64,000 nt of DNA from Ranitomeya imitator. Its lineage: Eukaryota. Where the stretch lies: assembly GCF_032444005.1 (NCBI RefSeq), contig NC_091284.1, forward strand, positions 386,384,001 to 386,448,000. The letters are read 5' to 3'. The position numbers were made by a program, and so were the translations under genes. Of this stretch, positions 32,485 to 52,453 are shown in pieces. Under the pieces are notes generated by a model. It did no database searches and had not been told where the DNA came from. It saw only the letters and a list, made by a program, of their open reading frames with translations. Every line of letters starts with the position of its first letter. The first letter of the stretch is position 1.

Positions 32485-33573
32485 GTCATGGATATTGGCC
32501 CTATCCCAGGCTAAAAACATCAGCTCTCTGCCAGAAATGGTGCATCCATAAAAGGCACCAAATGTAGCTCTTAGCCTTGCTCTTCCCACTTGCCCTGGTA
32601 CGGTGGCAAATGGGGTAATAGTTGGTAGAGTTGACAGTTTGGGGAGTTGATGTCACCTTTGTATTGTCAGGTGACATCAAGCCCAGAGGTTAGTAATGGA
32701 ATGTCGTACAAAAGATGCTCCCAATACTAACCCCATAGTCAAAATTGTCCAAAATAGACACAGAATAAAGTCCTTTATTTGAAATAATGACACACCATGT
32801 ATACTCACTGCAACACCCAATCCATTGGGTTATCTCCTGTAACAGAATAAAAATGATAACCATATTCCTCAAATATCTGCCAAGAAGATAATAATTTATC
32901 CATGATGCATCTAGCTCTGATACATTTAGATGGCAGGCTGCATTGTTGCATGATGCGACTACATAGTCTGCCATTCAGTAGAGACACTGAGCAGCACGCG
33001 CTTGTTCTCACAGCCAATGAACCCTGTTCAACTGACTCACGTCAGCGCAAGCGCCATGGGGAAACTTCTAATGGTGCTCATGCTGATGTGAGTTTAACTA
33101 AGTTCATTGGCTAAAAAACAAAACACCTATATACATGTCCTATATAAGGGCCATAATACTAGATAATAAACACCTACAAATAATGGCAACACCAGAAAGA
33201 ACCATATCATAAAAGGATATAACTTTATTGAACATAAAATAAATACAAAATATATAAAATACAAAGATATACTGCAGGTGAGGATCACATAAACAAGAAG
33301 GAAGAGGTAGATAACGCCTGGATAAAAGTCTATGTATAAACCACAGCTGACCTGTCACATAATAAATCCAAAAACAGAGTTGGAACAAAGTAAGGAGACC
33401 TTAATGTCTAATATGCCTATATACGTATGGAGAGCTACAACCAAAAACGTACACCAGTAAAGGCCGACAAAGGTCCTATGAATAGTATAAGATAGCATAT
33501 AACTAGTGACAACAACGTTACATTATGTACATATATTTACCAGATCAGGTGTAGGATAACCAGGCGTCCACCA

Positions 33574-33616
33574 CACCCGACGCGCGTTTCGCACTGAAAT
33601 GCTTCGTCCAGGGGTG
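33574..33616 (-). ncRNA. Minimal type I hammerhead ribozyme variant (copy 1)
   Basis: CACCC-CUGGACGAA-GCA(uuucag)UGC-GAA-ACGCGCGU-C-GGGUG; stem III is a palindrome. Confidence 0.72.
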
Positions 33617-33672
33617 GATAGACGCTGGTTTCATCCCTTTTTATATTGCAATAGGCCATAGGAACCGAAAAA

Positions 33673-33706
33673 CCGGAAACCGGAAGTAGATCTGGGCGCA
33701 TGCGCA
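33673..33706. promoter_or_regulatory. Putative PLE internal promoter: tandem ETS (CCGGAA, CCGGAAGT) and NRF1-like (GCGCATGCGCA) motifs in a CpG-rich patch; repeated in each unit
   Basis: Motifs read directly. They lie ~60-90 nt upstream of the hammerhead in the sense direction. Function is inferred. Confidence 0.5.
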
Positions 33707-34707
33707 CATAGCACAAGAGTTTCTTCATAATAAGTTGTCGCTCGGTATTCTTACTAATAATCACTGCGCAGTGTCTCTAAGTGATAAATAGCCGCCGTAT
33801 CCTATATACCGCCGCTACCGCCTGATGAAAAAATGAAGTGGCGGTAAGAAGAAGCGCCGTGTACAACTAAGTGCGGTCGTCATGGAAACCGAAGTCCCGC
33901 GATAGAAGATGTGAGCGCCGCGGCAGAAGCCCGGTGTCACCTGACAAGATCAAGTGATACAGTCACGTGAGGAAGGTAAGTAAACAACCATAGAAGTGTA
34001 CTAGAGACCGCAGACCAAGAAGAAGTTTTAGTACCGCAGAGAAAAAAGACGGAACCTAGAAAAAAAGAAAAAATGGAAGGAATGCACATAATAAATTAGA
34101 TAACAAACACAAGGATGACATACAACTTAGTGCTTATAACCAAATAATGGTAAGAATAATACAAAAAAACATATAAGTGTTATACTAACAGCCATCAACT
34201 AACTGCTATGCAGCAGAGCAATGGATAAAAAGGTGTACATATATATAATATAATCGAAATATAAAATTGGACATATACATATATATAAAACTACATACAC
34301 ATATACATATCACATAAAATTAGTGTAAACAACCTATGTATAAATAAATACGTATGTAAAAGTGCTGAGTGCTGCAGATGTCGGAGAACAAAAGTGACGA
34401 GTGCTTCAAACAGACGCCATCATATATAGGTAGAAGGTGAAAATGAAGATATCATCCTTGATAAGTGGAAGATGGAATAACGATGGCAACAAAATAAATA
34501 TCTAAAAGAATAGTAAATAAATATATATAAATATATGCATTCCAAAAGGGGAGAGAAAAAAAAAAAAACCAACATCAAAAAATCACAACAGCTCAAAGAG
34601 GATAAAAGAGAATTTAATGAGATTAAAAAAATAAAACAATGATTAAAAACACGAAGCAAGAAGAACTAGTGGAAAAATTGGTAACAGAACGACTGATGGA
34701 AGGTTCA

Positions 34708-37700
34708 TTACAAGAATGGTTGAAAACTGTTATGATCATTTAATCCATATGGTGAAATTGTGTTTAATTTAAAAATCCATTTTGTCTCCTTTTGGGCCAA
34801 TAGGCGTTTCCAGTTACCCCCACGTGGCCCAATGAAAACCCTATCAATGCCCCTAAATAAAAGTCCAGTGGGATCACATTGATGTTTTTCTTTGAAATGT
34901 CGTGGGATTGGCTTCAGAATTGTCAGATCATCACTGGTCTTGGCCCCTTCAATGTCTAGTATATGCTCCCGAATACGCCTCCTAAACTCCCTTGATGTCA
35001 TACCAACATATACAAGGCCACAGCCACAAGTGGCATGGTATATGACTGCTTTTGTAGTGCAGTTAATAGTGTGGGTGATGGTATATTGCTCAGTTGCATC
35101 CGAATTCATGAAATCCTTCGTTTTAACTACATTTTTGCATGCCACACACTTACCACAAGGTGAGCAGCCCCAAGCCGGGCCTTTGGATCCAAAGATAAAT
35201 TTGGTATTCTCACCCTTGTGGTAGCTGTGGACTAGATGATCACGTAAATTACGTGCCCTTCTATAGGTCACAGCAGGGGTAACCCCAACTATATTCGATA
35301 GGGTCTTATCAAGTGATAGGATGGACCAGTGTTTCTGAAGAATCTCATAAACCTCCTCACTCCGGGAATTAAAATCCAGGATACATCTTACCTTTGTGTC
35401 AAAGGTCTTGGTCTTCGTGGGTTTATTTCTCAATAAATGACATCGATTGCTTAGACGAGCTCTTGTGTATGCTTGACATAAATTCATCTTGCCATATCCA
35501 CGTTCCATGAATCTGTGCTGAAGGTCCCCGGCCTGTCTTTCAAAAAAGAGATCATTAGAGCAGATTCTCCTGGCTCTTAGAAACTGTCCAGTAGGGATGT
35601 TTCTCAGCAAGTGTCTAGGGTGTTGGGACGTAGCATGTAGCAAAGTATTGGCTGCTGTCTTTTTCCTAAACAGGTCTGTCTGAATACTGCCCATTTGATC
35701 GACTTGGATTAAGATGTCTAAGAATTCGATGTGTTGATTGCTACATTGATATGTCAATTTTAGATTTAAACAATTATCATTCAGATGTTTAAAGAAGGTG
35801 TCTAGGTCACTTTGTGTGCCTTGCCAAATTAGAAGCACATCATCAATGTAGCGCCACCATGCTACAACTCCAGAACACATAGGTATAGGATTAGACTGAA
35901 AAATGTCCCTCTCCCACAGCCCCAGGAAGAGATTTGCATATGAGGGCGCACAAGACGCCCCCATTGCAGTCCCCTGGAGCTGTAGGTAGAGGGACTCCTT
36001 AAAAAGGAAAAAATTATGTGTCAAAATAAAGTTTAAAGCTGTCAGAAGGAAATCACAGAGTGCCCCATCCAGACCACTCACGTTGAGAAAAAATTGTGTG
36101 GCACGAATACCGTCCTCATGTCGAATAGATGAGTATAAAGACTCAACATCACATGTTACAAGTAGCATGTCAGATTCCAGATGTATGCCGTCAAGTTTCC
36201 TGAGAACATCAGTTGTATCCTTCAGGAAGGATGGCAAAGTTTCCACCAAAGGTTTTAAATAGTGGTCTATTAATCTACATAAAGGGTCACATAAGTTGTT
36301 AATTCCAGATACAATTGGTCTACCTGGTGGACTGACCGGGTCCTTATGTACTTTAGGTAATAGGTAGATCACTGCCACATTAGGTTCGTTGATCAGTAGA
36401 CCTTCCATCTGTTTACAGGTGAGTATACCATCGTTCACAGCTTTTGACAACAACTCTTTTAACTCAGACCTGAATTTGGACATAGGGTTAAACGTTAGTC
36501 GACGATAACACACAATATTGTTAATTTGTCTATACATTTCTTTCTCGTATAATTCAACAGGCCAGATAACCACATTACCCCCTTTATCGGAGGGTTTTAT
36601 AACCACGTCTTTCCTATCCTCTAGTTCTTTGAGAGCCGTCCTTTCACCCTTTGTGAGGTTATCCCTTTTAATTGTTTTTGGGATATCCTCAAGGTCCCTC
36701 ATCACCATTCTGATGAATAGGTCAATCTCAGGATATGTAGAAGTCTGTGGAAATTTTGTAGATTTAGGGAGAAGATGTGAAGGATACTCACCATTACCTT
36801 TTCCAGATTCAGATTCCCTTGCCAGGTCTTCCAGTGTTTCAAGGACTTGTGTATCCGAAATCGTCGCTGTCATTGATACATCTTCCTGTTGATGGAACAT
36901 TTTCTTAAAGGTTAGCTTCCTAGCAAATAATTGTAGATCCTTTGTCACCGAGAACCTATCAAATCTTGATGCAGGGGAAAAAGACAGGCCGAGGCTCAGC
37001 ACCGAAATGTGGTCAGAAGACAATGGTATTTTAGATAGGTTAATTACCTTGGATGATGTACCAGGTATATTTGTTTCCTCATAACGGACTTTTCCATTTT
37101 GCTTCCTTTCACGTGGTCCACGGTTGTGTTCATATCTCCGCCTATTGTACCTGATAGGATATCTCCTAGTACTGGCAGATGATGTTGTAGACATGCCAGT
37201 TAATGACGTGTCCGTAGAGTTTTTAACTGATACATCATTCTTCCCGGTCTTTTGATTGTTCCATCTGAACATGCGATTAGATTTTTTGTCCTCCAGGTCC
37301 CTTAGAAATTTTTTAGTTTTAGTGTTTGAGATCTGGTTTTCCCATTCAACTAGATTTTTCTCAACCTCCTTCTTGAACAATTCAATTTCCTCTTTAGAAC
37401 ACTCTAAATTTAATTTCTTTTGTACTTCGCCAATTTCCACCTCTAGTTCCTCTAACGTTTTTGTATTAAAATCAATGATTATCCCCATGAAAGAGGATGA
37501 ACATATATTGCATGCCGTCTCCCATCTGAGACGAAACTCATCATCCTCTATTTGGAAGGACGGAAAAACTTGAATCCTCAGCCCACGGGGAGTGAGACCC
37601 TTTTTAAGGTAATTTTCAAGTGACACCTTATTCCACCAAGTACGTGTTCTCCGATTCAGGAGATTCTTCAGGGTTTTCTTAAGGGCTGCCTTTTGAGCTG

Positions 37701-37830
37701 AATCTTGTTCAGGAGGGACCTCACCCGCAAATATACTTTGAGCACGCTGTACCCAGGACGCATCTCGGCTCCTGAAGTCCATATTGGATAGGACAAAGAA
37801 ACTGCAAAACAACAAAACACCTATATACAT
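34708..37830 (-). CDS. Penelope-like RT + GIY-YIG endonuclease polyprotein, intact (1040 aa; probable start at Met17, 37782)
   Basis: PSDKGGNVVIW, LPKVHK..PPGRPIVS, DVESLYSSI, GTAMGASCAPSYANLF, RYIDD, FLDI, Cys linker CSPCGKCVAC, and GIY-YIG VIY..C.CGLVYVGMT...R.RI.EH. Neptune-like assignment inferred from the Cys linker. Confidence 0.95.
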   Translation of the reverse strand: MYIGVLLFCSFFVLSNMDFRSRDASWVQRAQSIFAGEVPPEQDSAQKAALKKTLKNLLNRRTRTWWNKVSLENYLKKGLTPRGLRIQVFPSFQIEDDEFRLRWETACNICSSSFMGIIIDFNTKTLEELEVEIGEVQKKLNLECSKEEIELFKKEVEKNLVEWENQISNTKTKKFLRDLEDKKSNRMFRWNNQKTGKNDVSVKNSTDTSLTGMSTTSSASTRRYPIRYNRRRYEHNRGPRERKQNGKVRYEETNIPGTSSKVINLSKIPLSSDHISVLSLGLSFSPASRFDRFSVTKDLQLFARKLTFKKMFHQQEDVSMTATISDTQVLETLEDLARESESGKGNGEYPSHLLPKSTKFPQTSTYPEIDLFIRMVMRDLEDIPKTIKRDNLTKGERTALKELEDRKDVVIKPSDKGGNVVIWPVELYEKEMYRQINNIVCYRRLTFNPMSKFRSELKELLSKAVNDGILTCKQMEGLLINEPNVAVIYLLPKVHKDPVSPPGRPIVSGINNLCDPLCRLIDHYLKPLVETLPSFLKDTTDVLRKLDGIHLESDMLLVTCDVESLYSSIRHEDGIRATQFFLNVSGLDGALCDFLLTALNFILTHNFFLFKESLYLQLQGTAMGASCAPSYANLFLGLWERDIFQSNPIPMCSGVVAWWRYIDDVLLIWQGTQSDLDTFFKHLNDNCLNLKLTYQCSNQHIEFLDILIQVDQMGSIQTDLFRKKTAANTLLHATSQHPRHLLRNIPTGQFLRARRICSNDLFFERQAGDLQHRFMERGYGKMNLCQAYTRARLSNRCHLLRNKPTKTKTFDTKVRCILDFNSRSEEVYEILQKHWSILSLDKTLSNIVGVTPAVTYRRARNLRDHLVHSYHKGENTKFIFGSKGPAWGCSPCGKCVACKNVVKTKDFMNSDATEQYTITHTINCTTKAVIYHATCGCGLVYVGMTSREFRRRIREHILDIEGAKTSDDLTILKPIPRHFKEKHQCDPTGLLFRGIDRVFIGPRGGNWKRLLAQKETKWIFKLNTISPYGLNDHNSFQPFL

Positions 37831-38267
37831 GTCCTATATAAGGGCCATAATACTAGATAATAAACACCTACAAATAATGGCAACACCAGAAAGAACCATA
37901 TCATAAAAGGATATAACTTTATTGAACATAAAATAAATACAAAATATATAAAATACAAAGATATACTGCAGGTGAGGATCACATAAACAAGAAGGAAGAG
38001 GTAGATAACGCCTGGATAAAAGTCTATGTATAAACCACAGCTGACCTGTCACATAATAAATCCAAAAACAGAGTTGGAACAAAGTAAGGAGACCTTAATG
38101 TCTAATATGCCTATATACGTATGGAGAGCTACAACCAAAAACGTACACCAGTAAAGGCCGACAAAGGTCCTATGAATAGTATAAGATAGCATATAACTAG
38201 TGACAACAACGTTACATTATGTACATATATTTACCAGATCAGGTGTAGGATAACCAGGCGTCCACCA

Positions 38268-38310
38268 CACCCGACGCGCGTTTCGCACTGAAATGCTTCG
38301 TCCAGGGGTG
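38268..38310 (-). ncRNA. Minimal hammerhead ribozyme variant (copy 2)
   Basis: Same sequence as 33574-33616. Confidence 0.72.
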
Positions 38311-39402
38311 GATAGACGCTGGTTTCATCCCTTTTTATATTGCAATAGGCCATAGGAACCGAAAAACCGGAAACCGGAAGCAGATCTGGGCGCATGCGCA
38401 CATAGCACAAGAGTTTCTTCATAATAAGTTGTCGCTCGGTATTCTTACTAATAATCACTGCGCAGTGTCTCTAAGTGATAAATAGCCGCCGTATCCTATA
38501 TACCGCCGCTACCGCCTGATGAAAAAATGAAGTGGCGGTAAGAAGAAGCGCCGTGTACAACTAAGTGCGGTCGTCATGGAAACCGAAGTCCCGCGATAGA
38601 AGATGTGAGCGCCGCGGCAGAAGCCCGGTGTCACCTGACAAGATCAAGTGATACAGTCACGTGAGGAAGGTAAGTAAACAACCATAGAAGTGTACTAGAG
38701 ACCGCAGACCAAGAAGAAGTTTTAGTACCGCAGAGAAAAAAGACGGAACCTAGAAAAAAAGAAAAAATGGAAGGAATGCACATAATAAATTAGATAACAA
38801 ACACAAGGATGACATACAACTTAGTGCTTATAACCAAATAATGGTAAGAATAATACAAAAAAACATATAAGTGTTATACTAACAGCCATCAACTAACTGC
38901 TATGCAGCAGAGCAATGGATAAAAAGGTGTACATATATATAATATAATCGAAATATAAAATTGAACATATATATATATATAAAACTACATACACATATAC
39001 ATATCACATAAAATTAGTGTAAACAACCTATGTATAAATAAATACGTATGTAAAAGTGCTGAGTGCTGCAGATGTCGGAGAACAAAAGTGACGAGTGCTT
39101 CAAACAGACGCCATCATATATAGGTAGAAGGTGAAAATGAAGATATCATCCTTGATAAGTGGAAGATGGAATAACGATGGTAACAAAATAAATATCTAAA
39201 AGAATAGTAAATAAATATATATAAATATATGCATTCCAAAAGGGGAGAGAAAAAAAAATAAAACCAACATCAAAAAATCACAACAGCTCAAAGAGGATAA
39301 AAGAGAATTTAATGAGATTAAAAAAATAAAACAATGATTAAAAACACGAAGCAAGAAGAACTAGTGGAAAAATTGGTAACAGAACGACTGATGGAAGGTT
39401 CA

Positions 39403-42400
39403 TTACAAGAATGGTTGAAAACTGTTATGATCATTTAATCCATATGGTGAAATTGTGTTTAATTTAAAAATCCATTTCGTCTCCTTTTGGGCCAATAGGC
39501 GTTTCCAGTTACCCCCACGTGGCCCAATGAAAACCCTATCAATGCCCCTAAATAAAAGTCCAGTGGGATCACATTGATGTTTTTCTTTGAAATGTCGTGG
39601 GATTGGCTTCAGAATTGTCAGATCATCACTGGTCTTGGCCCCTTCAATGTCTAGTATATGCTCCCGAATACGCCTCCTAAACTCCCTTGATGTCATACCA
39701 ACATATACAAGGCCACAGCCACAAGTGGCATGGTATATGACTGCTTTTGTAGTGCAGTTAATAGTGTGGGTGATGGTATATTGCTCAGTTGCATCCGAAT
39801 TCATGAAATCCTTCGTTTTAACTACATTTTTGCATGCCACACACTTACCACAAGGTGAGCAGCCCCAAGCCGGGCCTTTGGATCCAAAGATAAATTTGGT
39901 ATTCTCACCCTTGTGGTAGCTGTGGACTAGATGATCACGTAAATTACGTGCCCTTCTATAGGTCACAGCAGGGGTAACCCCAACTATATTCGATAGGGTC
40001 TTATCAAGTGATAGGATGGACCAGTGTTTCTGAAGAATCTCATAAACCTCCTCACTCCGGGAATTAAAATCCAGGATACATCTTACCTTTGTGTCAAAGG
40101 TCTTGGTCTTCGTGGGTTTATTTCTCAATAAATGACATCGATTGCTTAGACGAGCTCTTGTGTATGCTTGACATAAATTCATCTTGCCATATCCACGTTC
40201 CATGAATCTGTGCTGAAGGTCCCCGGCCTGTCTTTCAAAAAAGAGATCATTAGAGCAGATTCTCCTGGCTCTTAGAAACTGTCCAGTAGGGATGTTTCTC
40301 AGCAAGTGTCTAGGGTGTTGGGACGTAGCATGTAGCAAAGTATTGGCTGCTGTCTTTTTCCTAAACAGGTCTGTCTGAATACTGCCCGTTTGATCGACTT
40401 GGATTAAGATGTCTAAGAATTCGATGTGTTGATTGCTACATTGATATGTCAATTTTAGATTTAAACAATTATCATTCAGATGTTTAAAGAAGGTGTCTAG
40501 GTCACTTTGTGTGCCTTGCCAAATTAGAAGCACATCATCAATGTAGCGCCACCATGCTACAACTCCAGAACACATAGGTATAGGATTAGACTGAAAAATG
40601 TCCCTCTCCCACAGCCCCAGGAAGAGATTTGCATATGAGGGCGCACAAGACGCCCCCATTGCAGTCCCCTGGAGCTGTAGGTAGAGGGACTCCTTAAAAA
40701 GGAAAAAATTATGTGTCAAAATAAAGTTTAAAGCTGTCAGAAGGAAATCACAGAGTGCCCCATCCAGACCACTCACGTTGAGAAAAAATTGTGTGGCACG
40801 AATACCGTCCTCATGTCGAATAGATGAGTATAAAGACTCAACATCACATGTTACAAGTAGCATGTCAGATTCCAGATGTATGCCGTCAAGTTTCCTGAGA
40901 ACATCAGTTGTATCCTTCAGGAAGGATGGCAAAGTTTCCACCAAAGGTTTTAAATAGTGGTCTATTAATCTACATAAAGGGTCACATAAGTTGTTAATTC
41001 CAGATACAATTGGTCTACCTGGTGGACTGACCGGGTCCTTATGTACTTTAGGTAATAGGTAGATCACTGCCACATTAGGTTCGTTGATCAGTAGACCTTC
41101 CATCTGTTTACAGGTGAGTATACCATCGTTCACAGCTTTTGACAACAACTCTTTTAACTCAGACCTGAATTTGGACATAGGGTTAAACGTTAGTCGACGA
41201 TAACACACAATATTGTTAATTTGTCTATACATTTCTTTCTCGTATAATTCAACAGGCCAGATAACCACATTACCCCCTTTATCGGAGGGTTTTATAACCA
41301 CGTCTTTCCTATCCTCTAGTTCTTTGAGAGCCGTCCTTTCACCCTTTGTGAGGTTATCCCTTTTAATTGTTTTTGGGATATCCTCAAGGTCCCTCATCAC
41401 CATTCTGATGAATAGGTCAATCTCAGGATATGTAGAAGTCTGTGGAAATTTTGTAGATTTAGGGAGAAGATGTGAAGGATACTCACCATTACCTTTTCCA
41501 GATTCAGATTCCCTTGCCAGGTCTTCCAGTGTTTCAAGGACTTGTGTATCCGAAATCGTCGCTGTCATTGATACATCTTCCTGTTGATGGAACATTTTCT
41601 TAAAGGTTAGCTTCCTAGCAAATAATTGTAGATCCTTTGTCACCGAGAACCTATCAAATCTTGATGCAGGGGAAAAAGACAGGCCGAGGCTCAGCACCGA
41701 AATGTGGTCAGAAGACAATGGTATTTTAGATAGGTTAATTACCTTGGATGATGTACCAGGTATATTTGTTTCCTCATAACGGACTTTTCCATTTTGCTTC
41801 CTTTCACGTGGTCCACGGTTGTGTTCATATCTCCGCCTATTGTACCTGATAGGATATCTCCTAGTACTGGCAGATGATGTTGTAGACATGCCAGTTAATG
41901 ACGTGTCCGTAGAGTTTTTAACTGATACATCATTCTTCCCGGTCTTTTGATTGTTCCATCTGAACATGCGATTAGATTTTTTGTCCTCCAGGTCCCTTAG
42001 AAATTTTTTAGTTTTAGTGTTTGAGATCTGGTTTTTCCATTCAACTAGATTTTTCTCAACCTCCTTCTTGAACAATTCAATTTCCTCTTTAGAACACTCT
42101 AAATTTAATTTCTTTTGTACTTCGCCAATTTCCACCTCTAGTTCCTCTAACGTTTTTGTATTAAAATCAATGATTATCCCCATGAAAGAGGATGAACATA
42201 TATTGCATGCCGTCTCCCATCTGAGACGAAACTCATCATCCTCTATTTGGAAGGACGGAAAAACTTGAATCCTCAGCCCACGGGGAGTGAGACCCTTTTT
42301 AAGGTAATTTTCAAGTGACACCTTATTCCACCAAGTACGTGTTCTCCGATTCAGGAGATTCTTCAGGGTTTTCTTAAGGGCTGCCTTTTGAGCTGAATCT

Positions 42401-42525
42401 TGTTCAGGAGGGACCTCACCCGCAAATATACTTTGAGCACGCTGTACCCAGGACGCATCTCGGCTCCTGAAGTCCATATTGGATAGGACAAAGAAACTGC
42501 AAAACAACAAAACACCTATATACAT
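39403..42525 (-). CDS. Penelope-like RT + GIY-YIG polyprotein, intact second copy (1040 aa)
   Basis: Near-identical to copy 1; visible differences are VEWKNQ vs VEWENQ and VDQTGS vs VDQMGS. Confidence 0.95.
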   Translation of the reverse strand: MYIGVLLFCSFFVLSNMDFRSRDASWVQRAQSIFAGEVPPEQDSAQKAALKKTLKNLLNRRTRTWWNKVSLENYLKKGLTPRGLRIQVFPSFQIEDDEFRLRWETACNICSSSFMGIIIDFNTKTLEELEVEIGEVQKKLNLECSKEEIELFKKEVEKNLVEWKNQISNTKTKKFLRDLEDKKSNRMFRWNNQKTGKNDVSVKNSTDTSLTGMSTTSSASTRRYPIRYNRRRYEHNRGPRERKQNGKVRYEETNIPGTSSKVINLSKIPLSSDHISVLSLGLSFSPASRFDRFSVTKDLQLFARKLTFKKMFHQQEDVSMTATISDTQVLETLEDLARESESGKGNGEYPSHLLPKSTKFPQTSTYPEIDLFIRMVMRDLEDIPKTIKRDNLTKGERTALKELEDRKDVVIKPSDKGGNVVIWPVELYEKEMYRQINNIVCYRRLTFNPMSKFRSELKELLSKAVNDGILTCKQMEGLLINEPNVAVIYLLPKVHKDPVSPPGRPIVSGINNLCDPLCRLIDHYLKPLVETLPSFLKDTTDVLRKLDGIHLESDMLLVTCDVESLYSSIRHEDGIRATQFFLNVSGLDGALCDFLLTALNFILTHNFFLFKESLYLQLQGTAMGASCAPSYANLFLGLWERDIFQSNPIPMCSGVVAWWRYIDDVLLIWQGTQSDLDTFFKHLNDNCLNLKLTYQCSNQHIEFLDILIQVDQTGSIQTDLFRKKTAANTLLHATSQHPRHLLRNIPTGQFLRARRICSNDLFFERQAGDLQHRFMERGYGKMNLCQAYTRARLSNRCHLLRNKPTKTKTFDTKVRCILDFNSRSEEVYEILQKHWSILSLDKTLSNIVGVTPAVTYRRARNLRDHLVHSYHKGENTKFIFGSKGPAWGCSPCGKCVACKNVVKTKDFMNSDATEQYTITHTINCTTKAVIYHATCGCGLVYVGMTSREFRRRIREHILDIEGAKTSDDLTILKPIPRHFKEKHQCDPTGLLFRGIDRVFIGPRGGNWKRLLAQKETKWIFKLNTISPYGLNDHNSFQPFL

Positions 42526-42962
42526 GTCCTATATAAGGGCCATAATACTAGATAATAAACACCTACAAATAATGGCAACACCAGAAAGAACCATATCATA
42601 AAAGGATATAACTTTATTGAACATAAAATAAATACAAAATATATAAAATACAAAGATATACTGCAGGTGAGGATCACATAAACAAGAAGGAAGAGGTAGA
42701 TAACGCCTGGATAAAAGTCTATGTATAAACCACAGCTGACCTGTCACATAATAAATCCAAAAACAGAGTTGGAACAAAGTAAGGAGACCTTAATGTCTAA
42801 TATGCCTATATACGTATGGAGAGCTACAACCAAAAACGTACACCAGTAAAGGCCGACAAAGGTCCTATGAATAGTATAAGATAGCATATAACTAGTGACA
42901 ACAACGTTACATTATGTACATATATTTACCAGATCAGGTGTAGGATAACCAGGCGTCCACCA

Positions 42963-43005
42963 CACCCGACGCGCGTTTCGCACTGAAATGCTTCGTCCAG
43001 GGGTG
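42963..43005 (-). ncRNA. Minimal hammerhead ribozyme variant (copy 3)
   Basis: Same sequence as 33574-33616. Confidence 0.72.
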
Positions 43006-44094
43006 GATAGACGCTGGTTTCATCCCTTTTTATATTGCAATAGGCCATAGGAACCGAAAAACCGGAAACCGGAAGTAGATCTGGGCGCATGCGCACATAG
43101 CACAAGAGTTTCTTCATAATAAGTTGTCGCTCGGTATTCTTACTAATAATCACTGCGCAGTGTCTCTAAGTGATAAATAGCCGCCGTATCCTATATACCG
43201 CCACTACCGCCTGATGAAAAAATGAAGTGGCGGTAAGAAGAAGCGCCGTGTACAACTAAGTGCGGTCGTCATGGAAACCGAAGTCCCGCGATAGAAGATG
43301 TGAGCGCCGCGGCAGAAGCCCGGTGTCACCTGACAAGATCAAGTGATACAGTCACGTGAGGAAGGTAAGTAAACAACCATAGAAGTGTACTAGAGACCGC
43401 AGACCAAGAAGAAGTTTTAGTACCGCAGAGAAAAAAGACGGAACCTAGAAAAAAAGAAAAAATGGAAGGAATGCACATAATAAATTAGATAACAAACACA
43501 AGGATGACATACAACTTAGTGCTTATAACCAAATAATGGTAAGAATAATACAAAAAAACATATAAGTGTTATACTAACAGCCATCAACTAACTGCTATGC
43601 AGCAGAGCAATGGATAAAAAGGTGTACATATATATAATATAATCGAAATATAAAATTGGACATATACATATATATAAAACTACATACACATATACATATC
43701 ACATAAAATTAGTGTAAACAACCTATGTATAAATAAATACGTATGTAAAAGTGCTGAGTGCTGCAGATGTCGGAGAACAAAAGTGACGAGTGCTTCAAAC
43801 AGACGCCATCATATATAGGTAGAAGGTGAAAATGAAGATATCATCCTTGATAAGTGGAAGATGGAATAACGATGGCAACAAAATAAATATCTAAAAGAAT
43901 AGTAAATAAATATATATAAATATATGCATTCCAAAAGGGGAGAGAAAAAAAAAAAACAACATCAAAAAATCACAACAGCTCAAAGAGGATAAAAGAGAAT
44001 TTAATGAGATTAAAAAAATAAAACAATGATTAAAAACACGAAGCAAGAAGAACTAGTGGAAAAATTGGTAACAGAACGACTGATGGAAGGTTCA

Positions 44095-45386
44095 TTACAA
44101 GAATGGTTGAAAACTGTTATGATCATTTAATCCATATGGTGAAATTGTGTTTAATTTAAAAATCCATTTCGTCTCCTTTTGGGCCAATAGGCGTTTCCAG
44201 TTACCCCCACGTGGCCCAATGAAAACCCTATCAATGCCCCTAAATAAAAGTCCAGTGGGATCACATTGATGTTTTTCTTTGAAATGTCGTGGGATTGGCT
44301 TCAGAATTGTCAGATCATCACTGGTCTTGGCCCCTTCAATGTCTAGTATATGCTCCCGAATACGCCTCCTAAACTCCCTTGATGTCATACCAACATATAC
44401 AAGGCCACAGCCACAAGTGGCATGGTATATGACTGCTTTTGTAGTGCAGTTAATAGTGTGGGTGATGGTATATTGCTCAGTTGCATCCGAATTCATGAAA
44501 TCCTTCGTTTTAACTACATTTTTGCATGCCACACACTTACCACAAGGTGAGCAGCCCCAAGCCGGGCCTTTGGATCCAAAGATAAATTTGGTATTCTCAC
44601 CCTTGTGGTAGCTGTGGACTAGATGATCACGTAAATTACGTGCCCTTCTATAGGTCACAGCAGGGGTAACCCCAACTATATTCGATAGGGTCTTATCAAG
44701 TGATAGGATGGACCAGTGTTTCTGAAGAATCTCATAAACCTCCTCACTCCGGGAATTAAAATCCAGGATACATCTTACCTTTGTGTCAAAGGTCTTGGTC
44801 TTCGTGGGTTTATTTCTCAATAAATGACATCGATTGCTTAGACGAGCTCTTGTGTATGCTTGACATAAATTCATCTTGCCATATCCACGTTCCATGAATC
44901 TGTGCTGAAGGTCCCCGGCCTGTCTTTCAAAAAAGAGATCATTAGAGCAGATTCTCCTGGCTCTTAGAAACTGTCCAGTAGGGATGTTTCTCAGCAAGTG
45001 TCTAGGGTGTTGGGACGTAGCATGTAGCAAAGTATTGGCTGCTGTCTTTTTCCTAAACAGGTCTGTCTGAATACTGCCCGTTTGATCGACTTGGATTAAG
45101 ATGTCTAAGAATTCGATGTGTTGATTGCTACATTGATATGTCAATTTTAGATTTAAACAATTATCATTCAGATGTTTAAAGAAGGTGTCTAGGTCACTTT
45201 GTGTGCCTTGCCAAATTAGAAGCACATCATCAATGTAGCGCCACCATGCTACAACTCCAGAACACATAGGTATAGGATTAGACTGAAAAATGTCCCTCTC
45301 CCACAGCCCCAGGAAGAGATTTGCATATGAGGGCGCACAAGACGCCCCCATTGCAGTCCCCTGGAGCTGTAGGTAGAGGGACTCCT
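44095..45386 (-). pseudogene. 5'-truncated third PLE ORF (C-terminal RT, linker, GIY-YIG)
   Basis: Identity with copies 1 and 2 begins at ..ESLYLQLQGTAMG and stops at the inversion junction. Confidence 0.92.
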
Positions 45387-47876
45387 GGCATGTCTACAAC
45401 ATCATCTGCCAGTACTAGGAGATATCCTATCAGGTACAATAGGCGGAGATATGAACACAACCGTGGACCACGTGAAAGGAAGCAAAATGGAAAAGTCCGT
45501 TATGAGGAAACAAATATACCTGGTACATCATCCAAGGTAATTAACCTATCTAAAATACCATTGTCTTCTGACCACATTTCGGTGCTGAGCCTCGGCCTGT
45601 CTTTTTCCCCTGCATCAAGATTTGATAGGTTCTCGGTGACAAAGGATCTACAATTATTTGCTAGGAAGCTAACCTTTAAGAAAATGTTCCATCAACAGGA
45701 AGATGTATCAATGACAGCGACGATTTCGGATACACAAGTCCTTGAAACACTGGAAGACCTGGCAAGGGAATCTGAATCTGGAAAAGGTAATGGTGAGTAT
45801 CCTTCACATCTTCTCCCTAAATCTACAAAATTTCCACAGACTTCTACATATCCTGAGATTGACCTATTCATCAGAATGGTGATGAGGGACCTTGAGGATA
45901 TCCCAAAAACAATTAAAAGGGATAACCTCACAAAGGGTGAAAGGACGGCTCTCAAAGAACTAGAGGATAGGAAAGACGTGGTTATAAAACCCTCCGATAA
46001 AGGGGGTAATGTGGTTATCTGGCCTGTTGAATTATACGAGAAAGAAATGTATAGACAAATTAACAATATTGTGTGTTATCGTCGACTAACGTTTAACCCT
46101 ATGTCCAAATTCAGGTCTGAGTTAAAAGAGTTGTTGTCAAAAGCTGTGAACGATGGTATACTCACCTGTAAACAGATGGAAGGTCTACTGATCAACGAAC
46201 CTAATGTGGCAGTGATCTACCTATTACCTAAAGTACATAAGGACCCGGTCAGTCCACCAGGTAGACCAATTGTATCTGGAATTAACAACTTATGTGACCC
46301 TTTATGTAGATTAATAGACCACTATTTAAAACCTTTGGTGGAAACTTTGCCATCCTTCCTGAAGGATACAACTGATGTTCTCAGGAAACTTGACGGCATA
46401 CATCTGGAATCTGACATGCTACTTGTAACATGTGATGTTGAGTCTTTATACTCATCTATTCGACATGAGGACGGTATTCGTGCCACACAATTTTTTCTCA
46501 ACGTGAGTGGTCTGGATGGGGCACTCTGTGATTTCCTTCTGACAGCTTTAAACTTTATTTTGACACATAATTTTTTCCTTTTTAAGGAGTCCCTCTACCT
46601 ACAGCTCCAGGGGACTGCAATGGGGGCGTCTTGTGCGCCCTCATATGCAAATCTCTTCCTGGGGCTGTGGGAGAAGGACATTTTTCAGTCTAATCCTATA
46701 CCTATGTGTTCTGGAGTTGTAGCATGGTGGCGCTACATTGATGATGTGCTTCTAATTTGGCAAGGCACACAAAGTGACCTAGACACCTTCTTTAAACATC
46801 TGAATGATAATTGTTTAAATCTAAAATTGACATATCAATGTAGCAATCAACACATCGAATTCTTAGACATCTTAATCCAAGTCGATCAAACGGGCAGTAT
46901 TCAGACAGACCTGTTTAGGAAAAAGACAGCAGCCAATACTTTGCTACATGCTACGTCCCAACACCCTAGACACTTGCTGAGAAACATCCCTACTGGACAG
47001 TTTCTAAGAGCCAGGAGAATCTGCTCTAATGATCTCTTTTTTGAAAGACAGGCCGGGGACCTTCAGCACAGATTCATGGAACGTGGATATGGCAAGATGA
47101 ATTTATGTCAAGCATACACAAGAGCTCGTCTAAGCAATCGATGTCATTTATTGAGAAATAAACCCACGAAGACCAAGACCTTTGACACAAAGGTAAGATG
47201 TATCCTGGATTTTAATTCCCGGAGTGAGGAGGTTTATGAGATTCTTCAGAAACACTGGTCCATCCTATCACTTGATAAGACCCTATCGAATATAGTTGGG
47301 GTTACCCCTGCTGTGACCTATAGAAGGGCACGTAATTTACGTGATCATCTAGTCCACAGCTACCACAAGGGTGAGAATACCAAATTTATCTTTGGATCCA
47401 AAGGCCCGGCTTGGGGCTGCTCACCTTGTGGTAAGTGTGTGGCATGCAAAAATGTAGTTAAAACGAAGGATTTCATGAATTCGGATGCAACTGAGCAATA
47501 TACCATCACCCACACTATTAACTGCACTACAAAAGCAGTCATATACCATGCCACTTGTGGCTGTGGCCTTGTATATGTTGGTATGACATCAAGGGAGTTT
47601 AGGAGGCGTATTCGGGAGCATATACTAGACATTGAAGGGGCCAAGACCAGTGATGATCTGACAATTCTGAAGCCAATCCCACGACATTTCAAAGAAAAAC
47701 ATCAATGTGATCCCACTGGACTTTTATTTAGGGGCATTGATAGGGTTTTCATTGGGCCACGTGGGGGTAACTGGAAACGCCTATTGGCCCAAAAGGAGAC
47801 GAAATGGATTTTTAAATTAAACACAATTTCACCATATGGATTAAATGATCATAACAGTTTTCAACCATTCTTGTAA
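45385..47876 (+). pseudogene. Inverted, N-terminally truncated PLE ORF (lacks ~210 N-terminal aa, retains RT and GIY-YIG in an open frame)
   Basis: Starts at (T)GMSTTSSAS. The ORF-track N-terminus MHMRAHKTPP.. is antisense read-through from copy 3. One visible substitution, WEKD vs WERD. Confidence 0.9.
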
Positions 47877-48965
47877 TGAACCTTCCATCAGTCGTTCTGT
47901 TACCAATTTTTCCACTAGTTCTTCTTGCTTCGTGTTTTTAATCATTGTTTTATTTTTTTAATCTCATTAAATTCTCTTTTATCCTCTTTGAGCTGTTGTG
48001 ATTTTTTGATGTTGGTTTTTTTTTTTCTCTCCCCTTTTGGAATGCATATATTTATATATATTTATTTACTATTCTTTTAGATATTTATTTTGTTGCCATC
48101 GTTATTCCATCTTCCACTTATCAAGGATGATATCTTCATTTTCACCTTCTACCTATATATGATGGCGTCTGTTTGAAGCACTCGTCACTTTTGTTCTCCG
48201 ACATCTGCAGCACTCAGCACTTTTACATACGTATTTATTTATACATAGGTTGTTTACACTAATTTTATGTGATATGTATATGTGTATGTAGTTTTATATA
48301 TATGTATATGTCCAATTTTATATTTCGATTATATTATATATATGTACACCTTTTTATCCATTGCTCTGCTGCATAGCAGTTAGTTGATGGCTGTTAGTAT
48401 AACACTTATATGTTTTTTTGTATTATTCTTACCATTATTTGGTTATAAGCACTAAGTTGTATGTCATCCTTGTGTTTGTTATCTAATTTATTATGTGCAT
48501 TCCTTCCATTTTTTCTTTTTTTCTAGGTTCCGTCTTTTTTCTCTGCGGTACTAAAACTTCTTCTTGGTCTGCGGTCTCTAGTACACTTCTATGGTTGTTT
48601 ACTTACCTTCCTCACGTGACTGTATCACTTGATCTTGTCAGGTGACACCGGGCTTCTGCCGCGGCGCTCACATCTTCTATCGCGGGACTTCGGTTTCCAT
48701 GACGACCGCACTTAGTTGTACACGGCGCTTCTTCTTACCGCCACTTCATTTTTTCATCAGGCGGTAGCGGCGGTATATAGGATACGGCGGCTATTTATCA
48801 CTTAGAGACACTGCGCAGTGATTATTAGTAAGAATACCGAGCGACAACTTATTATGAAGAAACTCTTGTGCTATGTGCGCATGCGCCCAGATCTACTTCC
48901 GGTTTCCGGTTTTTCGGTTCCTATGGCCTATTGCAATATAAAAAGGGATGAAACCAGCGTCTATC

Positions 48966-49008
48966 CACCCCTGGACGAAGCATTTCAGTGCGAAACGCGC
49001 GTCGGGTG
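48966..49008 (+). ncRNA. Minimal hammerhead ribozyme variant (inverted-arm copy)
   Basis: CACCC 48966-70, core 48971-79, stem II 48980-91, GAA, palindrome ACGCGCGT 48995-49002, predicted cleavage after C49003. Stem I is extendable (ACCAG-CGTC / GACG-C-CTGGT). Confidence 0.72.
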
Positions 49009-50787
49009 TGGTGGACGCCTGGTTATCCTACACCTGATCTGGTAAATATATGTACATAATGTAACGTTGTTGTCACTAGTTATATGCTATCTTATACTAT
49101 TCATAGGACCTTTGTCGGCCTTTACTGGTGTACGTTTTTGGTTGTAGCTCTCCATACGTATATAGGCATATTAGACATTAAGGTCTCCTTACTTTGTTCC
49201 AACTCTGTTTTTGGATTTATTATGTGACAGGTCAGCTGTGGTTTATACATAGACTTTTATCCAGGCGTTATCTACCTCTTCCTTCTTGTTTATGTGATCC
49301 TCACCTGCAGTATATCTTTGTATTTTATATATTTTGTATTTATTTTATGTTCAATAAAGTTATATCCTTTTATGATATGGTTCTTTCTGGTGTTGCCATT
49401 ATTTGTAGGTGTTTATTAAGTTCATTGGCTGTAAATTCCCAGGACCTTTCTAATGGCACCATGAGCGTGAGAACTTTCTCACGCTCGCGTTGACATCAGT
49501 GAGGTGAAAGTTCACCAGGAGACACTGAACTGAGCAGAGTCTCTCTTGTATAGTTGCATCATGCAACAATGCAGGCTGACATCTATATAAACCAAATCCA
49601 AGTACCTTTCAGTTGCTTGGCTTAAACAATCACTGTCGTTTCAACAAATTTTTAATAAATCACTAGTACAGGTAAATATAAGCAACTTTAGAAGATCTTA
49701 TCACATAAATCTGCTTCTACTTATCCACTTCTTTTCCTCCCTCTACCACCTGGACTTATTATCCACTTATCACAGTGAGATATCATTCAAAAAGACCAAC
49801 TTCCAGCAAATGTATTTTACTTTGGTGCTGAATTCACATCCACACAGCTCATTACTGATGGATGATGTCCGCCATGCTGCTGCTTCTTTCTGGGTGCAAC
49901 AGGGAAAGAGAAGCAGGAACCCGTCTATCTACTGTATGTCTGCTGTCTATAGGAGACATCATAGCAGCTAGTCTCCATACTGCAGCTTCGAGGGAACTGA
50001 AAATTAGAGAATGTGCAGAAAAGAAAATATAATGGCCAGAAATGCTGTTTTTCCTCTTGTACATACATATAACAGCTTGTTTTGAAAAGTTAACTGAAAG
50101 CACAGTTACGGTTTAAAGATGTCTTCTACAGCTTATTCTGAGAAGTTACCTCAAACAACAAGTATGGCAGAACAATGTCTTCTGTTTTTCTATAAAAAGA
50201 AATGAGCCAGTTTTTCCAGATGATATTTTAGCATAGACTTTTGTGTCTACGTGAGCAATAACTCAATTTCTGATTTTATATGATTTTACTCTGCACTTTT
50301 GAAGCAGTTTTCTTCGTGTATCTCTGTACCTCTGTCTATCTCTCAAGCTCCTTCTTACTTCTCCACTTCAATAGACTTCTACAAGCAGCAACTGTAATCT
50401 GATCAGATTACAGACAGATTTGAGCAGTAAATTCAGAAAAAACGCCTCATAAATTGAAAAAGATTTTTTTCTGTAATAACATATATTACTGTACAATATA
50501 AGTTTGGGGTTTTCATTACCACTTGTAATATTGATTTATAGAAATAAAATAATAATTATAGTAAATTTTTTAATCATCACATAATGAAAACTTTTGACAA
50601 ATTTTTAAATACATTGGACCAATTCATCAAGAACAGCAATTTTCATGCCGATCTTGATGAGGTGGCACGGTGGAGTCAAATGCTTCTGATTCTTGAAGCC
50701 TCTGTACATCATCTCAGAAATCTCACTCCGGTCAGGGAGTGGAGTGAGACTTCTGGCATAGAGAATGCCACAACTCATGATGAATTA

Positions 50788-50982
50788 ACCTGCCGTCACA
50801 CTATCAGTATTTGGTCAGTATTTTACATCAGTATTCATAAGCCAAAACCAGGAGTGGAACAATTAGAGGAAAAGTATAATAGAAACATATGCATCACTTC
50901 TGTATTTATCACCCACTCCTGGTTTTGGCTTACAAATACTGATGTAAAATACTGACCAAATACTGCTAGTGTGACGGCAGCC
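50788..50982. mobile_element. PIF/Harbinger-type (Tourist-like) MITE; related nested copies at ~55807-56030
   Basis: CTGCCGTCACACTA / TAGTGTGACGGCAG TIRs, TTA/TAA flanks, palindromic body (CAGTATTTGGTCAGTATTTTAC). Confidence 0.65.
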
Positions 50983-51796
50983 TAAAAGTTGAAAAGTTTT
51001 TGTACAACTCAGAGTTGCAGCAAAAATGTGTGATTTTTTTTTCAAAGCAATTTACACCAGAATTCTGATAAATTTGTTTTGATGAATCGAGGCCTTTGTT
51101 TTTCAATTCCTGAAGCATTTTTAAAGTTTTGTGTAGTGTTAGTAAAGGGAAGTATGTACTGGTTTGATAGATTGTTTCCAATATAGTCCATGCTCTATGA
51201 GATAATTATATCAAAAGCAAATCAAAATTACTGTTTTGCTACTATGTATCACTGGGGGTTAAGGCTGGTGCTACATGGTGACTTTGGTAATGACAGGTTG
51301 CATGGCCAAAGATGTCTGATGTCACTGTTACAAACAAAAACAAAGAAAAGCAGACTAGGTCCTATGAATGGGGATCACCACGATACGAAAATGGCATAGG
51401 TATAAACACAGCTTTATTAGGAAACAGATAGAAATGACAAACACACTCACATTAAAAACATTTAAAAAGCATAATCATGCTATAAACAACAGCCCCTAAT
51501 ACGGCAATAACCTACATAGGACTCAAAAATATATTGGCAAATGCAGTGTGCAATCATAGAGCCAAACCATAGTATATTACATATGGACCATAATACTTTG
51601 GCACTCCCCCAAATAATTTATGAGAAAAACATGATAAATATGCAAATAAACTCAGATCTGTAAACATGTACCGTCTAAATGTGGAGCTCTCACTAACGTG
51701 TATATCCCTGCACCCAATAATAAAGACCTGCACAAAAATAAACCTGTCTAACAATTTAGAAACAGGTATGCATGTGGATGTAAAGAATAAAGGATC

Positions 51797-51847
51797 ACCC
51801 CTGACGAAGCCACCCTGTGTGGTGGCGACACGCGACACGCGTTGGGT
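51797..51847 (+). ncRNA. Hammerhead-like motif with GAC in place of GAA and a 7-nt internal duplication
   Basis: ACCC-CUGACGAA-GCCACC(cugugu)GGUGGC-GACACGC-GAC-ACGCGU-U-GGGU. Confidence 0.5.
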
Positions 51848-52453
51848 CTTGGTATAGCGAAGAAAAAATAAAGAAAAAAGGAACCACTTCATATAATTGC
51901 ACACCACAGAATGAAAATGAATAAAAAGGCAAACTTTTATTGACACATCAATAAAAACACTTAAAACGGTATCATACCGACATCCCCACATACACCCGCC
52001 AAAGCAATACAGTACAAGCAAATGAAGGCGCCAATATACAAAAATGCTAAATAGCAATGAATAACACAGCACACTGATCAATGTCCCGTCAGGCACAACA
52101 TCTGTATAACTGAACCAAGATGGCGTAATGAGTACAGCAAGCACCCCCACAAAATAAAGACAGATACTGCCAACTGAGAGACAAGGATAAGCCCATATAG
52201 GTCAATGTGGCGTATAGAAACGAGGAGGTGCCTAGGCGACTGGGTCCAGACACAGTGGTGGTAGAAGAACTGGACAGCGTGAAAACAATAAATGTGCATC
52301 CGCAGCAATGCCCATGTATAAAAATATAACTACCACCTAGAAGAAGAGTGTATCCAGGTCCCAGGTCCGGCCAGACAGAACACAGAGAGGCGCTGTGAAG
52401 AAACCCACATGAGGGTGTAATGCGCCAAAGGCAGGGCGAACGTGGGGAGGAAG

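What the first reader, a model, noticed from the sequence alone, without database searches (positions are those of the whole stretch)
33099..49430. One 16.3-kb Penelope-like insertion: tandem multimer plus inverted arm inside a single TSD
Seen: a 12-14-bp direct repeat brackets 2 full units, a 5'-truncated third unit and a 4.03-kb inverted arm. The arm ends ~40 nt short of the same 3' terminus and is joined by a 2-nt (CT) microhomology. Units differ by only a few private substitutions, and both full ORFs are intact. Established: PLEs form partial tandems (pLTRs), often have inverted 5' segments and carry hammerheads. Inference: all of this was written in one event. Either both target strands primed cDNA, as in twin priming, on a template of at least 4 units, or RT ran round a circular 4.69-kb monomer (rolling-circle reverse transcription). 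The length far exceeds the usual one-unit-plus-pLTR structure, and this locus could be an active master copy.
Basis: partly seen in the sequence, partly recalled or inferred. Interest (0 to 1): 0.85.

Follow-up and report, generated by a model that had tools for sequence, protein, structure and literature searches.

The report
Frog Penelope-like tandem-plus-inverted insertion
A young 16.3-kb block in a frog-like genome is one insertion of a Penelope-like jumping gene, laid down as 2.6 head-to-tail copies plus a mirror-image copy; this layout and the mechanism behind it are already described for this class, so it is a large, clean example and not a new kind of thing.

Summary
Window 33113-49417 (16,305 bp) lies between two exact copies of a 13-bp target duplication. 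It contains 2.61 head-to-tail units of a 4.69-kb RT + GIY-YIG Penelope-like element (PLE) on the minus strand and a 4.03-kb inverted arm, joined at a 2-nt CT microhomology. The four copies differ by 10 substitutions and one homopolymer site, and both 1040-aa ORFs are intact.

Both outer ends are sense-strand 3' ends that fall 52 nt apart around the ORF start. That interval is the published PLE "tail", the stretch between two internal reverse-transcription start sites. Published in vitro work shows a PLE protein cutting and extending both target strands and proposes a multi-copy mRNA template. [quoted passage not shown]

One dual-primed event is therefore the best reading (about 0.55). Later unequal crossover that added a unit is not excluded. 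"At least 4 units" is not required, rolling-circle copying is untested, and "active master copy" is unsupported, because the RNA contigs carry letters of sibling copies. Only assembled contigs of public runs were available, so unit number could not be checked.

The scan had already found similar head-to-head PLE insertions elsewhere in this genome. Interest is low to moderate.

The parts
33100..33112 (.). Left copy of the 13-bp target-site duplication AAGTTCATTGGCT
   Evidence: The paralogous host repeat at 56219-56358 carries a single copy of this sequence.
33113..33164 (-). 52-nt 'tail'. This stretch lies between the two reverse-transcription start sites. It is present at the left terminus and absent at the right one. 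It holds the first ATG (33136-33134) and about 8 codons.
   Evidence: compared with the published tail.
33113..37803 (-). Unit 1, a full 4.69-kb unit. It is the 3'-most unit in sense orientation, and its end abuts the left target duplication.
34708..37830 (-). [quoted passage not shown] Its first ATG lies in the preceding unit's tail.
33579..33611 (-). Hammerhead-like motif, type I, with a minimal helix III carrying a palindromic GCGC loop and the core CUG-G-ACGA. Identical copies lie at 38273-38305(-), 42968-43000(-) and 48971-49003(+).
   Evidence: Word depth is very high in the DNA runs of two organisms and in the RNA runs.
37804..42498 (-). Unit 2, a full unit, joined seamlessly head-to-tail to units 1 and 3.
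39403..42525 (-). Intact 1040-aa ORF of unit 2. It differs from the unit 1 ORF at E164K and M713T.
42499..45386 (-). Unit 3, 5'-truncated at unit offset about 2887. It keeps the 3' UTR (pLTR) and the C-terminal 418-430 codons.
45385..45386 (.). Inversion joint with a 2-nt CT microhomology between the two cDNA 3' ends.
45385..49417 (+). Inverted arm covering unit offsets about 52 to 4089, 5'-truncated within the ORF. Its 3' end abuts the right target duplication, with a 1-nt overlap.
49418..49430 (.). Right copy of the 13-bp target-site duplication

Best explanation
This is a single retrotransposition of an autonomous, endonuclease-bearing Penelope-like element. By its linker motif it is Neptune-type.

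Proposed steps:
1. The element's GIY-YIG endonuclease made nicks staggered by 13 bp.
2. Both resulting 3'-OH ends primed reverse transcription on sense RNA at the element's two internal start sites near the pLTR/ORF junction. These lie 29 nt before the first ATG and at +24 relative to it.
3. The top-strand primer produced a 12.27-kb cDNA that ran through 2.6 consecutive units. The template was a multi-unit read-through RNA, or terminally redundant RNAs linked by homology-guided template switches.
4. The bottom-strand primer produced a 4.03-kb cDNA.
5. The two cDNA 3' ends annealed through 2 nt (CT), and each was filled in on the other.

The locus has since accumulated about 0.06% substitutions per site, enriched at CpG.

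Shown here: the anatomy, the target duplication, the microhomology and the position of the termini. Inferred: that this was one event, that both strands primed, and the nature of the template.
For: - Exact 13-bp direct repeat at both edges, absent from the internal joints. A paralogous host repeat carries one copy and serves as an empty-site proxy.
- Both edges are sense-strand 3' ends, 52 nt apart around the ATG. This equals the published 'tail', the interval between two RT start sites.
- The PAc protein cleaves and extends both strands, is predicted to be a dimer, and a multi-copy mRNA is proposed as its template.
- The u1/u2 and u2/u3 joints are identical and seamless.
- All nine polarisable substitutions are private to one copy, giving a star-like pattern with no rate heterogeneity.
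- 3 of 10 substitutions are CpG transitions (P = 0.011), which indicates decay after insertion from initially identical copies.
- The inversion joint is asymmetric, linking offset 2887 to offset 4089 with a 1.2-kb single-copy loop. It is therefore neither a palindromic read artefact nor a snap-back product.
Against: - The unit count rests on one assembly. No long read or contig was seen to bridge the joints.
- A unit added later by unequal crossover would leave no shared substitution with probability 0.25-0.5 if it happened in the first half of the locus's age.
- The only shared state, the poly-A length, groups u1 with u2 against u3 and the arm. That grouping is what such a crossover could produce.
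- No empty allele was found.
- No multi-unit RNA was demonstrated. Most RNA contigs of the family are spliced inside the ORF, whereas all inserted units are unspliced.
Confidence: 0.55

Rival explanations
1. Two steps. An ordinary PLE insertion (inverted arm, 0.6-unit partial copy, one full unit) was made in one event. Later the array gained exactly one 4.69-kb unit. The gain came either from unequal sister-chromatid or homologous exchange between the 2.9-kb overlapping parts, or from a second self-targeted ('homing') insertion into the pLTR/ORF junction.
For: - Tandem copies sharing 2.9 kb of homology are good substrates for exchange.
- The poly-A tract state is shared by u1 and u2 and differs from u3 and the arm.
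- The absence of shared substitutions rejects this only weakly (P = 0.06-0.5, depending on timing).
- The PAc endonuclease cuts its own ORF-pLTR junction in vitro.
Against: - All nine polarisable substitutions are private, which gives a star-like pattern.
- Both internal joints are identical, with no extra target duplication or filler.
- Homopolymer length is labile and prone to sequencing error.
- Multi-unit PLE and retrozyme insertions are reported elsewhere, so no second step is needed.
Confidence: 0.25
2. One event, but the template was a covalently closed 4.69-kb monomeric RNA. It would be produced by hammerhead self-cleavage of a tandem transcript followed by ligation, and the reverse transcriptase would have run around it 2.6 times (rolling-circle reverse transcription).
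For: - There is one hammerhead-like motif per unit, with the palindromic helix-III loop typical of PLE ribozymes that act as dimers.
- The motif is extremely abundant and conserved in two organisms and is present in RNA.
- Rolling-circle mobilisation has been proposed for the PLE-dependent non-LTR retrozymes.
- The unit joints are seamless and identical.
Against: - The resulting DNA would be identical to that from a linear multimeric template, so nothing here favours a circle.
- The Rfam score is 16.5 bits against a gathering score of 34, and the catalytic box has an inserted G. The minimum-free-energy fold is a plain hairpin, not the ribozyme fold.
- The PAc study found no RNA ends at the hammerhead cleavage site in vivo.
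- No circular RNA of several kilobases is documented for autonomous PLEs in the papers read.
Confidence: 0.1
3. Assembly artefact. The number of tandem units, or the inverted arm, is mis-assembled from reads of several family copies.
For: - The units are more than 99.8% identical and 4.7 kb long, which is a hard case for assemblers. The PLE literature warns about this.
- The u1-private letters at 34783 and 35693 are not seen in X1 contigs.
- No contig listed bridges the inversion joint.
Against: - Each of the four copies carries its own private differences, which an erroneous duplication would not create.
- The inversion joint is asymmetric, unlike fold-back read artefacts.
- The flanks share a precise target duplication.
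- Logan contigs drop rare variants and break at repeats, so their silence is uninformative.
Confidence: 0.08

Closest known systems
Canonical insertion architecture of endonuclease-containing Penelope-like elements (Evgen'ev & Arkhipova 2005; Arkhipova 2006; Arkhipova et al. 2013, PMC3846280; Craig et al. 2021, PMC8557442, Fig. 2)
   Same: - RT and C-terminal GIY-YIG in a single ORF.
- Head-to-tail partial tandem that forms pLTRs.
- An inverted 5'-truncated copy next to it.
- A short target duplication around the whole complex.
- A 30-40-bp 'tail' at only one end, containing the first codons of the ORF.
- A hammerhead-type motif in the pLTR.
   Different: - This block has 2.6 units of a long (4.69-kb) element and a 4-kb inverted arm. 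The commoner form is one unit plus a pLTR plus an inverted pLTR.
- The tail is 52 nt.
- The hammerhead box is non-canonical.
PAc (Poseidon of Anolis carolinensis), in vitro target-primed reverse transcription (PMC11167929)
   Same: - Both target strands are cleaved and extended.
- Reverse transcription starts at two internal sites near the pLTR-ORF junction, and the interval between them is the tail.
[quoted passage not shown]
   Different: - In PAc the start sites lie 111-118 nt into the ORF, in an AC-rich stem-loop, and the hammerhead overlaps the start codon.
- Here the start sites lie 29 nt before the first ATG and at +24 relative to it. The RNA there is GU-rich with no significant fold.
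- Here the hammerhead-like motif lies about 445 nt upstream of the first ATG in sense orientation.
- The linker motif points to a different clade.
L1 twin priming (Ostertag & Kazazian 2001; from my own knowledge)
   Same: - Both 3'-OH ends of a staggered break prime cDNA.
- The result is an inverted plus a direct segment inside one target duplication.
- There is microhomology at the inversion joint.
   Different: - In L1 the second primer anneals anywhere inside the same RNA, and the two segments are adjacent, non-overlapping parts of one monomer.
- Here both primers use dedicated start sites and the two arms overlap completely in unit coordinates. This requires several units or several RNA molecules.
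Animal non-LTR retrozymes: small hammerhead circular RNAs mobilised by PLEs (Cervera & de la Pena; PMC7761336; bioRxiv 10.64898/2026.07.22.740005)
   Same: - Tandem multi-unit insertions.
- A type I hammerhead-like motif in each unit.
- Sequence kinship with PLE pLTRs.
- A rolling-circle mechanism has been proposed.
   Different: - Retrozymes are non-coding units of 150-400 nt with demonstrated circular RNAs.
- This is a 4.69-kb autonomous element, with no evidence of a circular RNA.

Membership tests
Penelope-like element, endonuclease-containing (EN+) | Reverse transcriptase domain of PLE type | tested here: met
   Pfam RVT_1, E = 1e-7, at aa 515-693. There are 120 homologues, mostly anuran proteins carrying RT, PF28514 and PF26215, with the best at 54-57% identity. 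The QGTAMG motif is present. No PLE-versus-LINE phylogeny was run.
Penelope-like element, endonuclease-containing (EN+) | [quoted passage not shown] | tested here: met
   Pfam GIY-YIG match is weak (E = 0.0085). The sequence reads VIY-HATCGCGL-VYVG, followed by R, H, E and N residues. The defining motif is taken from Craig et al. 2021.
Penelope-like element, endonuclease-containing (EN+) | Partial-tandem insertion forming pLTRs, often with an adjacent inverted 5'-truncated copy, inside one target duplication | tested here: met
Penelope-like element, endonuclease-containing (EN+) | Optional 30-40-bp 'tail' at one end only, spanning the first codons of the ORF | tested here: met
   A 52-nt extension at the left end only contains the ATG and about 8 codons. 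It is somewhat longer than the published range.
Penelope-like element, endonuclease-containing (EN+) | Hammerhead ribozyme motif in the pLTR | tested here: inconclusive
   Rfam Hammerhead_1 scores 16.5 bits against a gathering score of 34, E = 2.7. The core is CUG-G-ACGA with an inserted G. Helix III with a GCGC loop is typical of PLE minimal hammerheads. Cleavage was not tested.
Neptune clade of PLEs | [quoted passage not shown] | tested here: met
   CSPCGKCVAC lies about 45 aa upstream of the GIY motif. RT phylogeny was not run, so the clade assignment is tentative.
L1-type twin priming on a single monomeric RNA | The target-proximal end of the inverted segment is adjacent, in RNA coordinates, to the 5' truncation point of the direct segment | tested here: not met
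   The arm starts at unit offset 52, while the direct block ends at offset 2887 of its third unit. The arms overlap fully in unit coordinates. The locus works like twin priming but is not the L1 form.
Retrozyme-type rolling-circle element | Self-cleaving ribozymes that release a monomer which is circularised; circular RNA detectable | not testable with these tools
   Only assembled contigs of RNA runs were available. A circle junction would equal the tandem junction.

The most novel reading that the evidence does not exclude
The 2.6 seamless units were copied in one pass from a hammerhead-processed, ligated, circular 4.69-kb RNA of an autonomous Penelope-like element. That would mean full-length PLEs, and not only their small non-coding retrozyme derivatives, replicate by rolling-circle reverse transcription.
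Probability: 0.1. Interest if true: 0.75.

Novelty: new member of a known kind. Interest (0 to 1): 0.3.

Why it matters
The locus is a well-preserved natural product of the unusual PLE integration pathway. Both termini fall on what appear to be the two internal reverse-transcription start sites. It has a precise 13-bp target duplication and a microhomology joint, and one cDNA of at least 12.3 kb.

It gives in vivo support, in an amphibian Neptune-type element, to conclusions reached in vitro with an Anolis Poseidon element: both strands are primed, and the tail is the interval between the start sites. It also suggests a highly processive RT or a multi-unit template.

It does not open a new question. 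The open one, whether the template is linear multimeric or circular, cannot be answered from this DNA.

Tried and rejected
- Rfam scans. The whole region at E <= 1 gave no ribozyme. A 2.5-kb sub-region at E <= 10 gave only the sub-threshold hammerhead.
- Other copies of the family in the window: none, so no local survey of unit number was possible.
- Exact-protein look-up of the ORF in public assemblies: not on record.
- PDB sequence search: no hit.
- Search of the scan's notes by sequence: blank.
- Read laying on 32950-38900 with two DNA and two RNA runs. Only Logan contigs exist for these runs. No strand-changing joint and no bridging piece was listed for the inversion joint or the target-duplication junctions. 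Organism B lacks the flank, so there is no empty allele. Word depths are not copy numbers.
- Fold of the RNA around the two start sites: no significant structure, z = -0.32. The PAc-like 'stem-loop' idea was dropped.
- Snap-back or self-priming origin, as proposed for palindromic PLE joints: rejected. A snap-back on the arm could not add two further full units ending at a second start site next to the other copy of the target duplication.
- Two independent insertions: rejected. The outer flanks share one target duplication and no inner one exists.
- Fold-back read artefact: rejected, because the joint is asymmetric with a 1.2-kb single-copy loop.
- The host paralogue at 56.2 kb is only about 76% similar. 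It serves as a proxy for the empty site, not as a true one.
Full report
**1. What is there**

Self-comparison of 31-52 kb shows three direct copies spaced 4694/4695 bp apart, starting at 33110, 37804 and 42499. It also shows inverted arms that are 99-100% complementary and pair 45385-49418 with each of the direct copies.

Reading the edges and searching for the 13-mer places AAGTTCATTGGCT at 33100-33112 and 49418-49430. It is absent from the internal unit joints. One near-copy (1 mismatch) lies at 56229. With one mismatch allowed, 0.22 matches are expected by chance in the window.

The inserted block is 33113-49417, or 16,305 bp. The left part, 33113-45386 (12,274 bp, 2.61 units), has the element's sense strand on the minus strand. 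The right part, 45385-49417 (4,033 bp, 0.86 unit), has it on the plus strand. At the joint the direct copy ends ...GGGACTCCT and the inverted copy begins CTGGCATG..., with CT shared.

**2. What the unit is**

Each full unit carries a 1040-aa ORF (34708-37830 and 39403-42525, minus strand).
- It has a Pfam RVT_1 domain and a weak GIY-YIG match.
- The C-terminus reads VIY-HATCGCGL-VYVG, preceded by CSPCGKCVAC. That gives the two cysteines inside GIY-YIG that define PLE endonucleases, plus the upstream CX2-5CxxC linker that Craig et al. ascribe to Neptune/Nematis and not to Penelope/Poseidon.
- Homologues are overwhelmingly anuran proteins, 54-57% identical at best. The host is therefore a frog-like genome, and the family is not itself in the protein database.
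- The two ORFs differ at two residues.

About 445 nt upstream of the first ATG in sense orientation, inside the 1.6-kb 3' UTR (pLTR), each copy has a hammerhead-like motif (33579-33611 and three equivalents).
- Rfam Hammerhead_1 gives only 16.5 bits against a gathering score of 34 (E = 2.7).
- The catalytic box carries an inserted G (CUG-G-ACGA).
- Helix III is the 2-bp stem with a palindromic GCGC loop typical of minimal, dimer-dependent PLE hammerheads.
- The minimum-free-energy fold is a plain hairpin.

**3. Where the termini fall**

In sense orientation the first ATG of the ORF lies upstream of the unit boundary. Its A corresponds to u1 position 33136.
- The left terminus (33113) is 23 nt downstream of that A.
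- The right terminus corresponds to u1 position 33165, which is 29 nt upstream of it.
- Both ends stop just after the same 9-nt string, AAACACCTA on the cDNA strand.

This interval is the known PLE 'tail'.
- Arkhipova et al. 2013 describe a typical Penelope insert as an ORF between two pLTRs plus an adjacent inverted pLTR, inside a 9-bp target duplication. A 31-bp tail is present at one end only, and the pLTR-plus-tail contains the first codons of the ORF.
- Craig et al. 2021 (Fig. [quoted passage not shown]
- The 2024 in vitro study of PAc shows that the PLE protein cleaves and extends both target strands and is predicted to be a dimer. It starts reverse transcription at two internal sites near the pLTR-ORF junction, and the interval between them 'clearly corresponds' to the tail. 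The study proposes an mRNA with multiple element copies as template.

**4. Mechanism**

The geometry fits target-primed synthesis from both 3'-OH ends of a 13-bp staggered break.
- The plus-strand 3' end at 33112 primes a cDNA that runs rightwards through u1, u2 and 2.9 kb of u3.
- The minus-strand 3' end at 49418 primes a cDNA that runs leftwards for 4.03 kb.
- The two cDNA 3' ends share CT/AG and can anneal and be filled in.

A snap-back of the short cDNA on itself would reproduce the 2.8-kb arms and the 1.2-kb loop seen. It could not add two more full units ending at the other start site next to the other copy of the target duplication, so I reject it.

The classical L1 rule is not met. Under that rule the start of the inverted segment adjoins the truncation point of the direct segment on one monomeric RNA. 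Here the arms overlap fully in unit coordinates. The locus works like twin priming but needs several units or several RNA molecules.
- One RNA serving both primers would have to span about 18 kb (3.9 units).
- With two RNA molecules, 2.6 units suffice.
- Three templates give identical DNA: a linear read-through multimer, terminally redundant RNAs joined by homology-guided strand transfer, or a circular monomer.

**5. One event or several?**

The four copies differ at 10 substitution sites and one poly-A length site.
- All nine polarisable substitutions are private: u2 has 4, u1 has 2, u3 has 2 and the arm has 1.
- Rates do not differ significantly among copies.
- Three of the ten are CpG transitions, while CpG makes up 4.9% of bases (P = 0.011). 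This points to germline decay after insertion from initially identical copies, not to RT errors or mixed templates.
- At 6e-4 substitutions per site the locus would be roughly 0.2-0.6 Myr old for rates of 1-3e-9 per site per year. Those rates are assumed, not measured.

The star-like pattern favours simultaneous origin, but the power is low. If a unit had been added by unequal crossover halfway through the locus's age, the chance of seeing no shared substitution would still be about 0.25. The only shared state, poly-A length, groups u1 with u2 against u3 and the arm, which such a crossover could produce. Homopolymers are, however, labile and error-prone.

**6. Target site**

The flanks belong to a degenerate palindromic host repeat. 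A paralogue at 56219-56358 aligns across the reconstructed empty site and carries one copy of GAGTTCATTGGCT. This supports duplication at insertion, but the paralogue is not a true empty allele.

**7. Public reads**

Only Logan contigs were available. I laid them on 32950-38900.
- The DNA run X1 (organism A) covers the flank and the element with exact pieces.
- No listed piece bridges the target-duplication junctions, and no strand-changing joint was listed.
- The u1-private letters are read as the majority letters, as expected from contigs that drop rare variants.
- Organism B lacks the flank.
- The assembly's unit count therefore remains unverified.

The RNA runs X25 and X26 hold 58-64% of the unit's sampled words. 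Their contigs differ from this locus by about 1%, so the family is expressed but this locus is not shown to be the source. The 'master copy' idea is unsupported.

**8. Comparison and verdict**

All defining PLE features that I could test are met. The hammerhead is inconclusive.

The architecture and the dual-priming, internal-initiation mechanism are published. Within my three full-text searches, the papers that contain both 'Penelope-like' and 'twin priming' do not, judging by their titles and abstracts, deal with PLE insertion structure; I did not open them. The concept is nevertheless in PMC11167929.

The scan's own notes list several head-to-head PLE insertions inside one target duplication, and a ten-unit non-coding fold-back, in the same genome. 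I used those as leads only.

What is unusual here is scale: 2.6 + 0.86 units of a 4.7-kb autonomous element, and a single cDNA of at least 12.3 kb. I rate it a clean, large new member of a known kind, with interest 0.3. The rolling-circle reading stays possible (about 0.1) but has no specific support.

Noticed in passing
window 35533-36323, 36470-36791, 36965-37047 (minus strand), and donors at 35389 and 34349: RNA contigs of two runs skip three segments inside the 1040-aa ORF. All three have GT..AG ends on the element's sense strand. Joint depths are 17-45, against 3-10 for the unspliced contigs. The spliced form stops at codon 263, so the abundant RNA would encode only an N-terminal protein of about 262 aa, and the RT-EN ORF needs the unspliced minority. 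Two further donors join to an exon (loose end CAAAGTCATTGATGCTGAAGTCAGG) that is not in the window. All genomic units keep these segments.
   Followed up: partly
window 33571-33617 and 38262-38310: The 47-nt hammerhead-like motif has word depth 1900-3900 in the DNA run of organism A and 830-1330 in that of organism B. It is also raised in RNA, about 40-fold above the rest of the element. At 33594 most copies read A and not C. The variant core (CUG-G-ACGA) is thus shared by very many elements in two species, which suggests constraint despite being non-canonical.
   Followed up: partly
window 35911-35982: The DNA that encodes the RT motif QGTAMGASCAPSYANLF has word depth of about 7000 in both DNA runs. 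This stretch is conserved at 95% or more at the nucleotide level across a very large number of PLE copies in two organisms.
   Followed up: no
window 32490-33112, 49431-49600 and 56219-56990: The host site is a degenerate repeat with palindromic parts (for example 49463-49486). A second, roughly 76-83% similar copy lies 7 kb downstream in mixed orientation.
   Followed up: partly
window 51334-53576: The neighbouring element has 209-nt and 97-nt inverted arms (96-97% complementary) around about 1.5-1.8 kb. I found no direct repeats in it.
   Followed up: no
window 50785-50985: A 73-nt inverted repeat (93% complementary, 55-nt loop) gives a sub-threshold Rfam MIR7696 match (44 bits against a gathering score of 83). 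It is probably a MITE-type hairpin.
   Followed up: no
window 1-4000: Strong strand asymmetry (GC skew -0.22 to -0.45, AT skew -0.24 to -0.50) and high G+C (0.53-0.57) at the start of the window.
   Followed up: no
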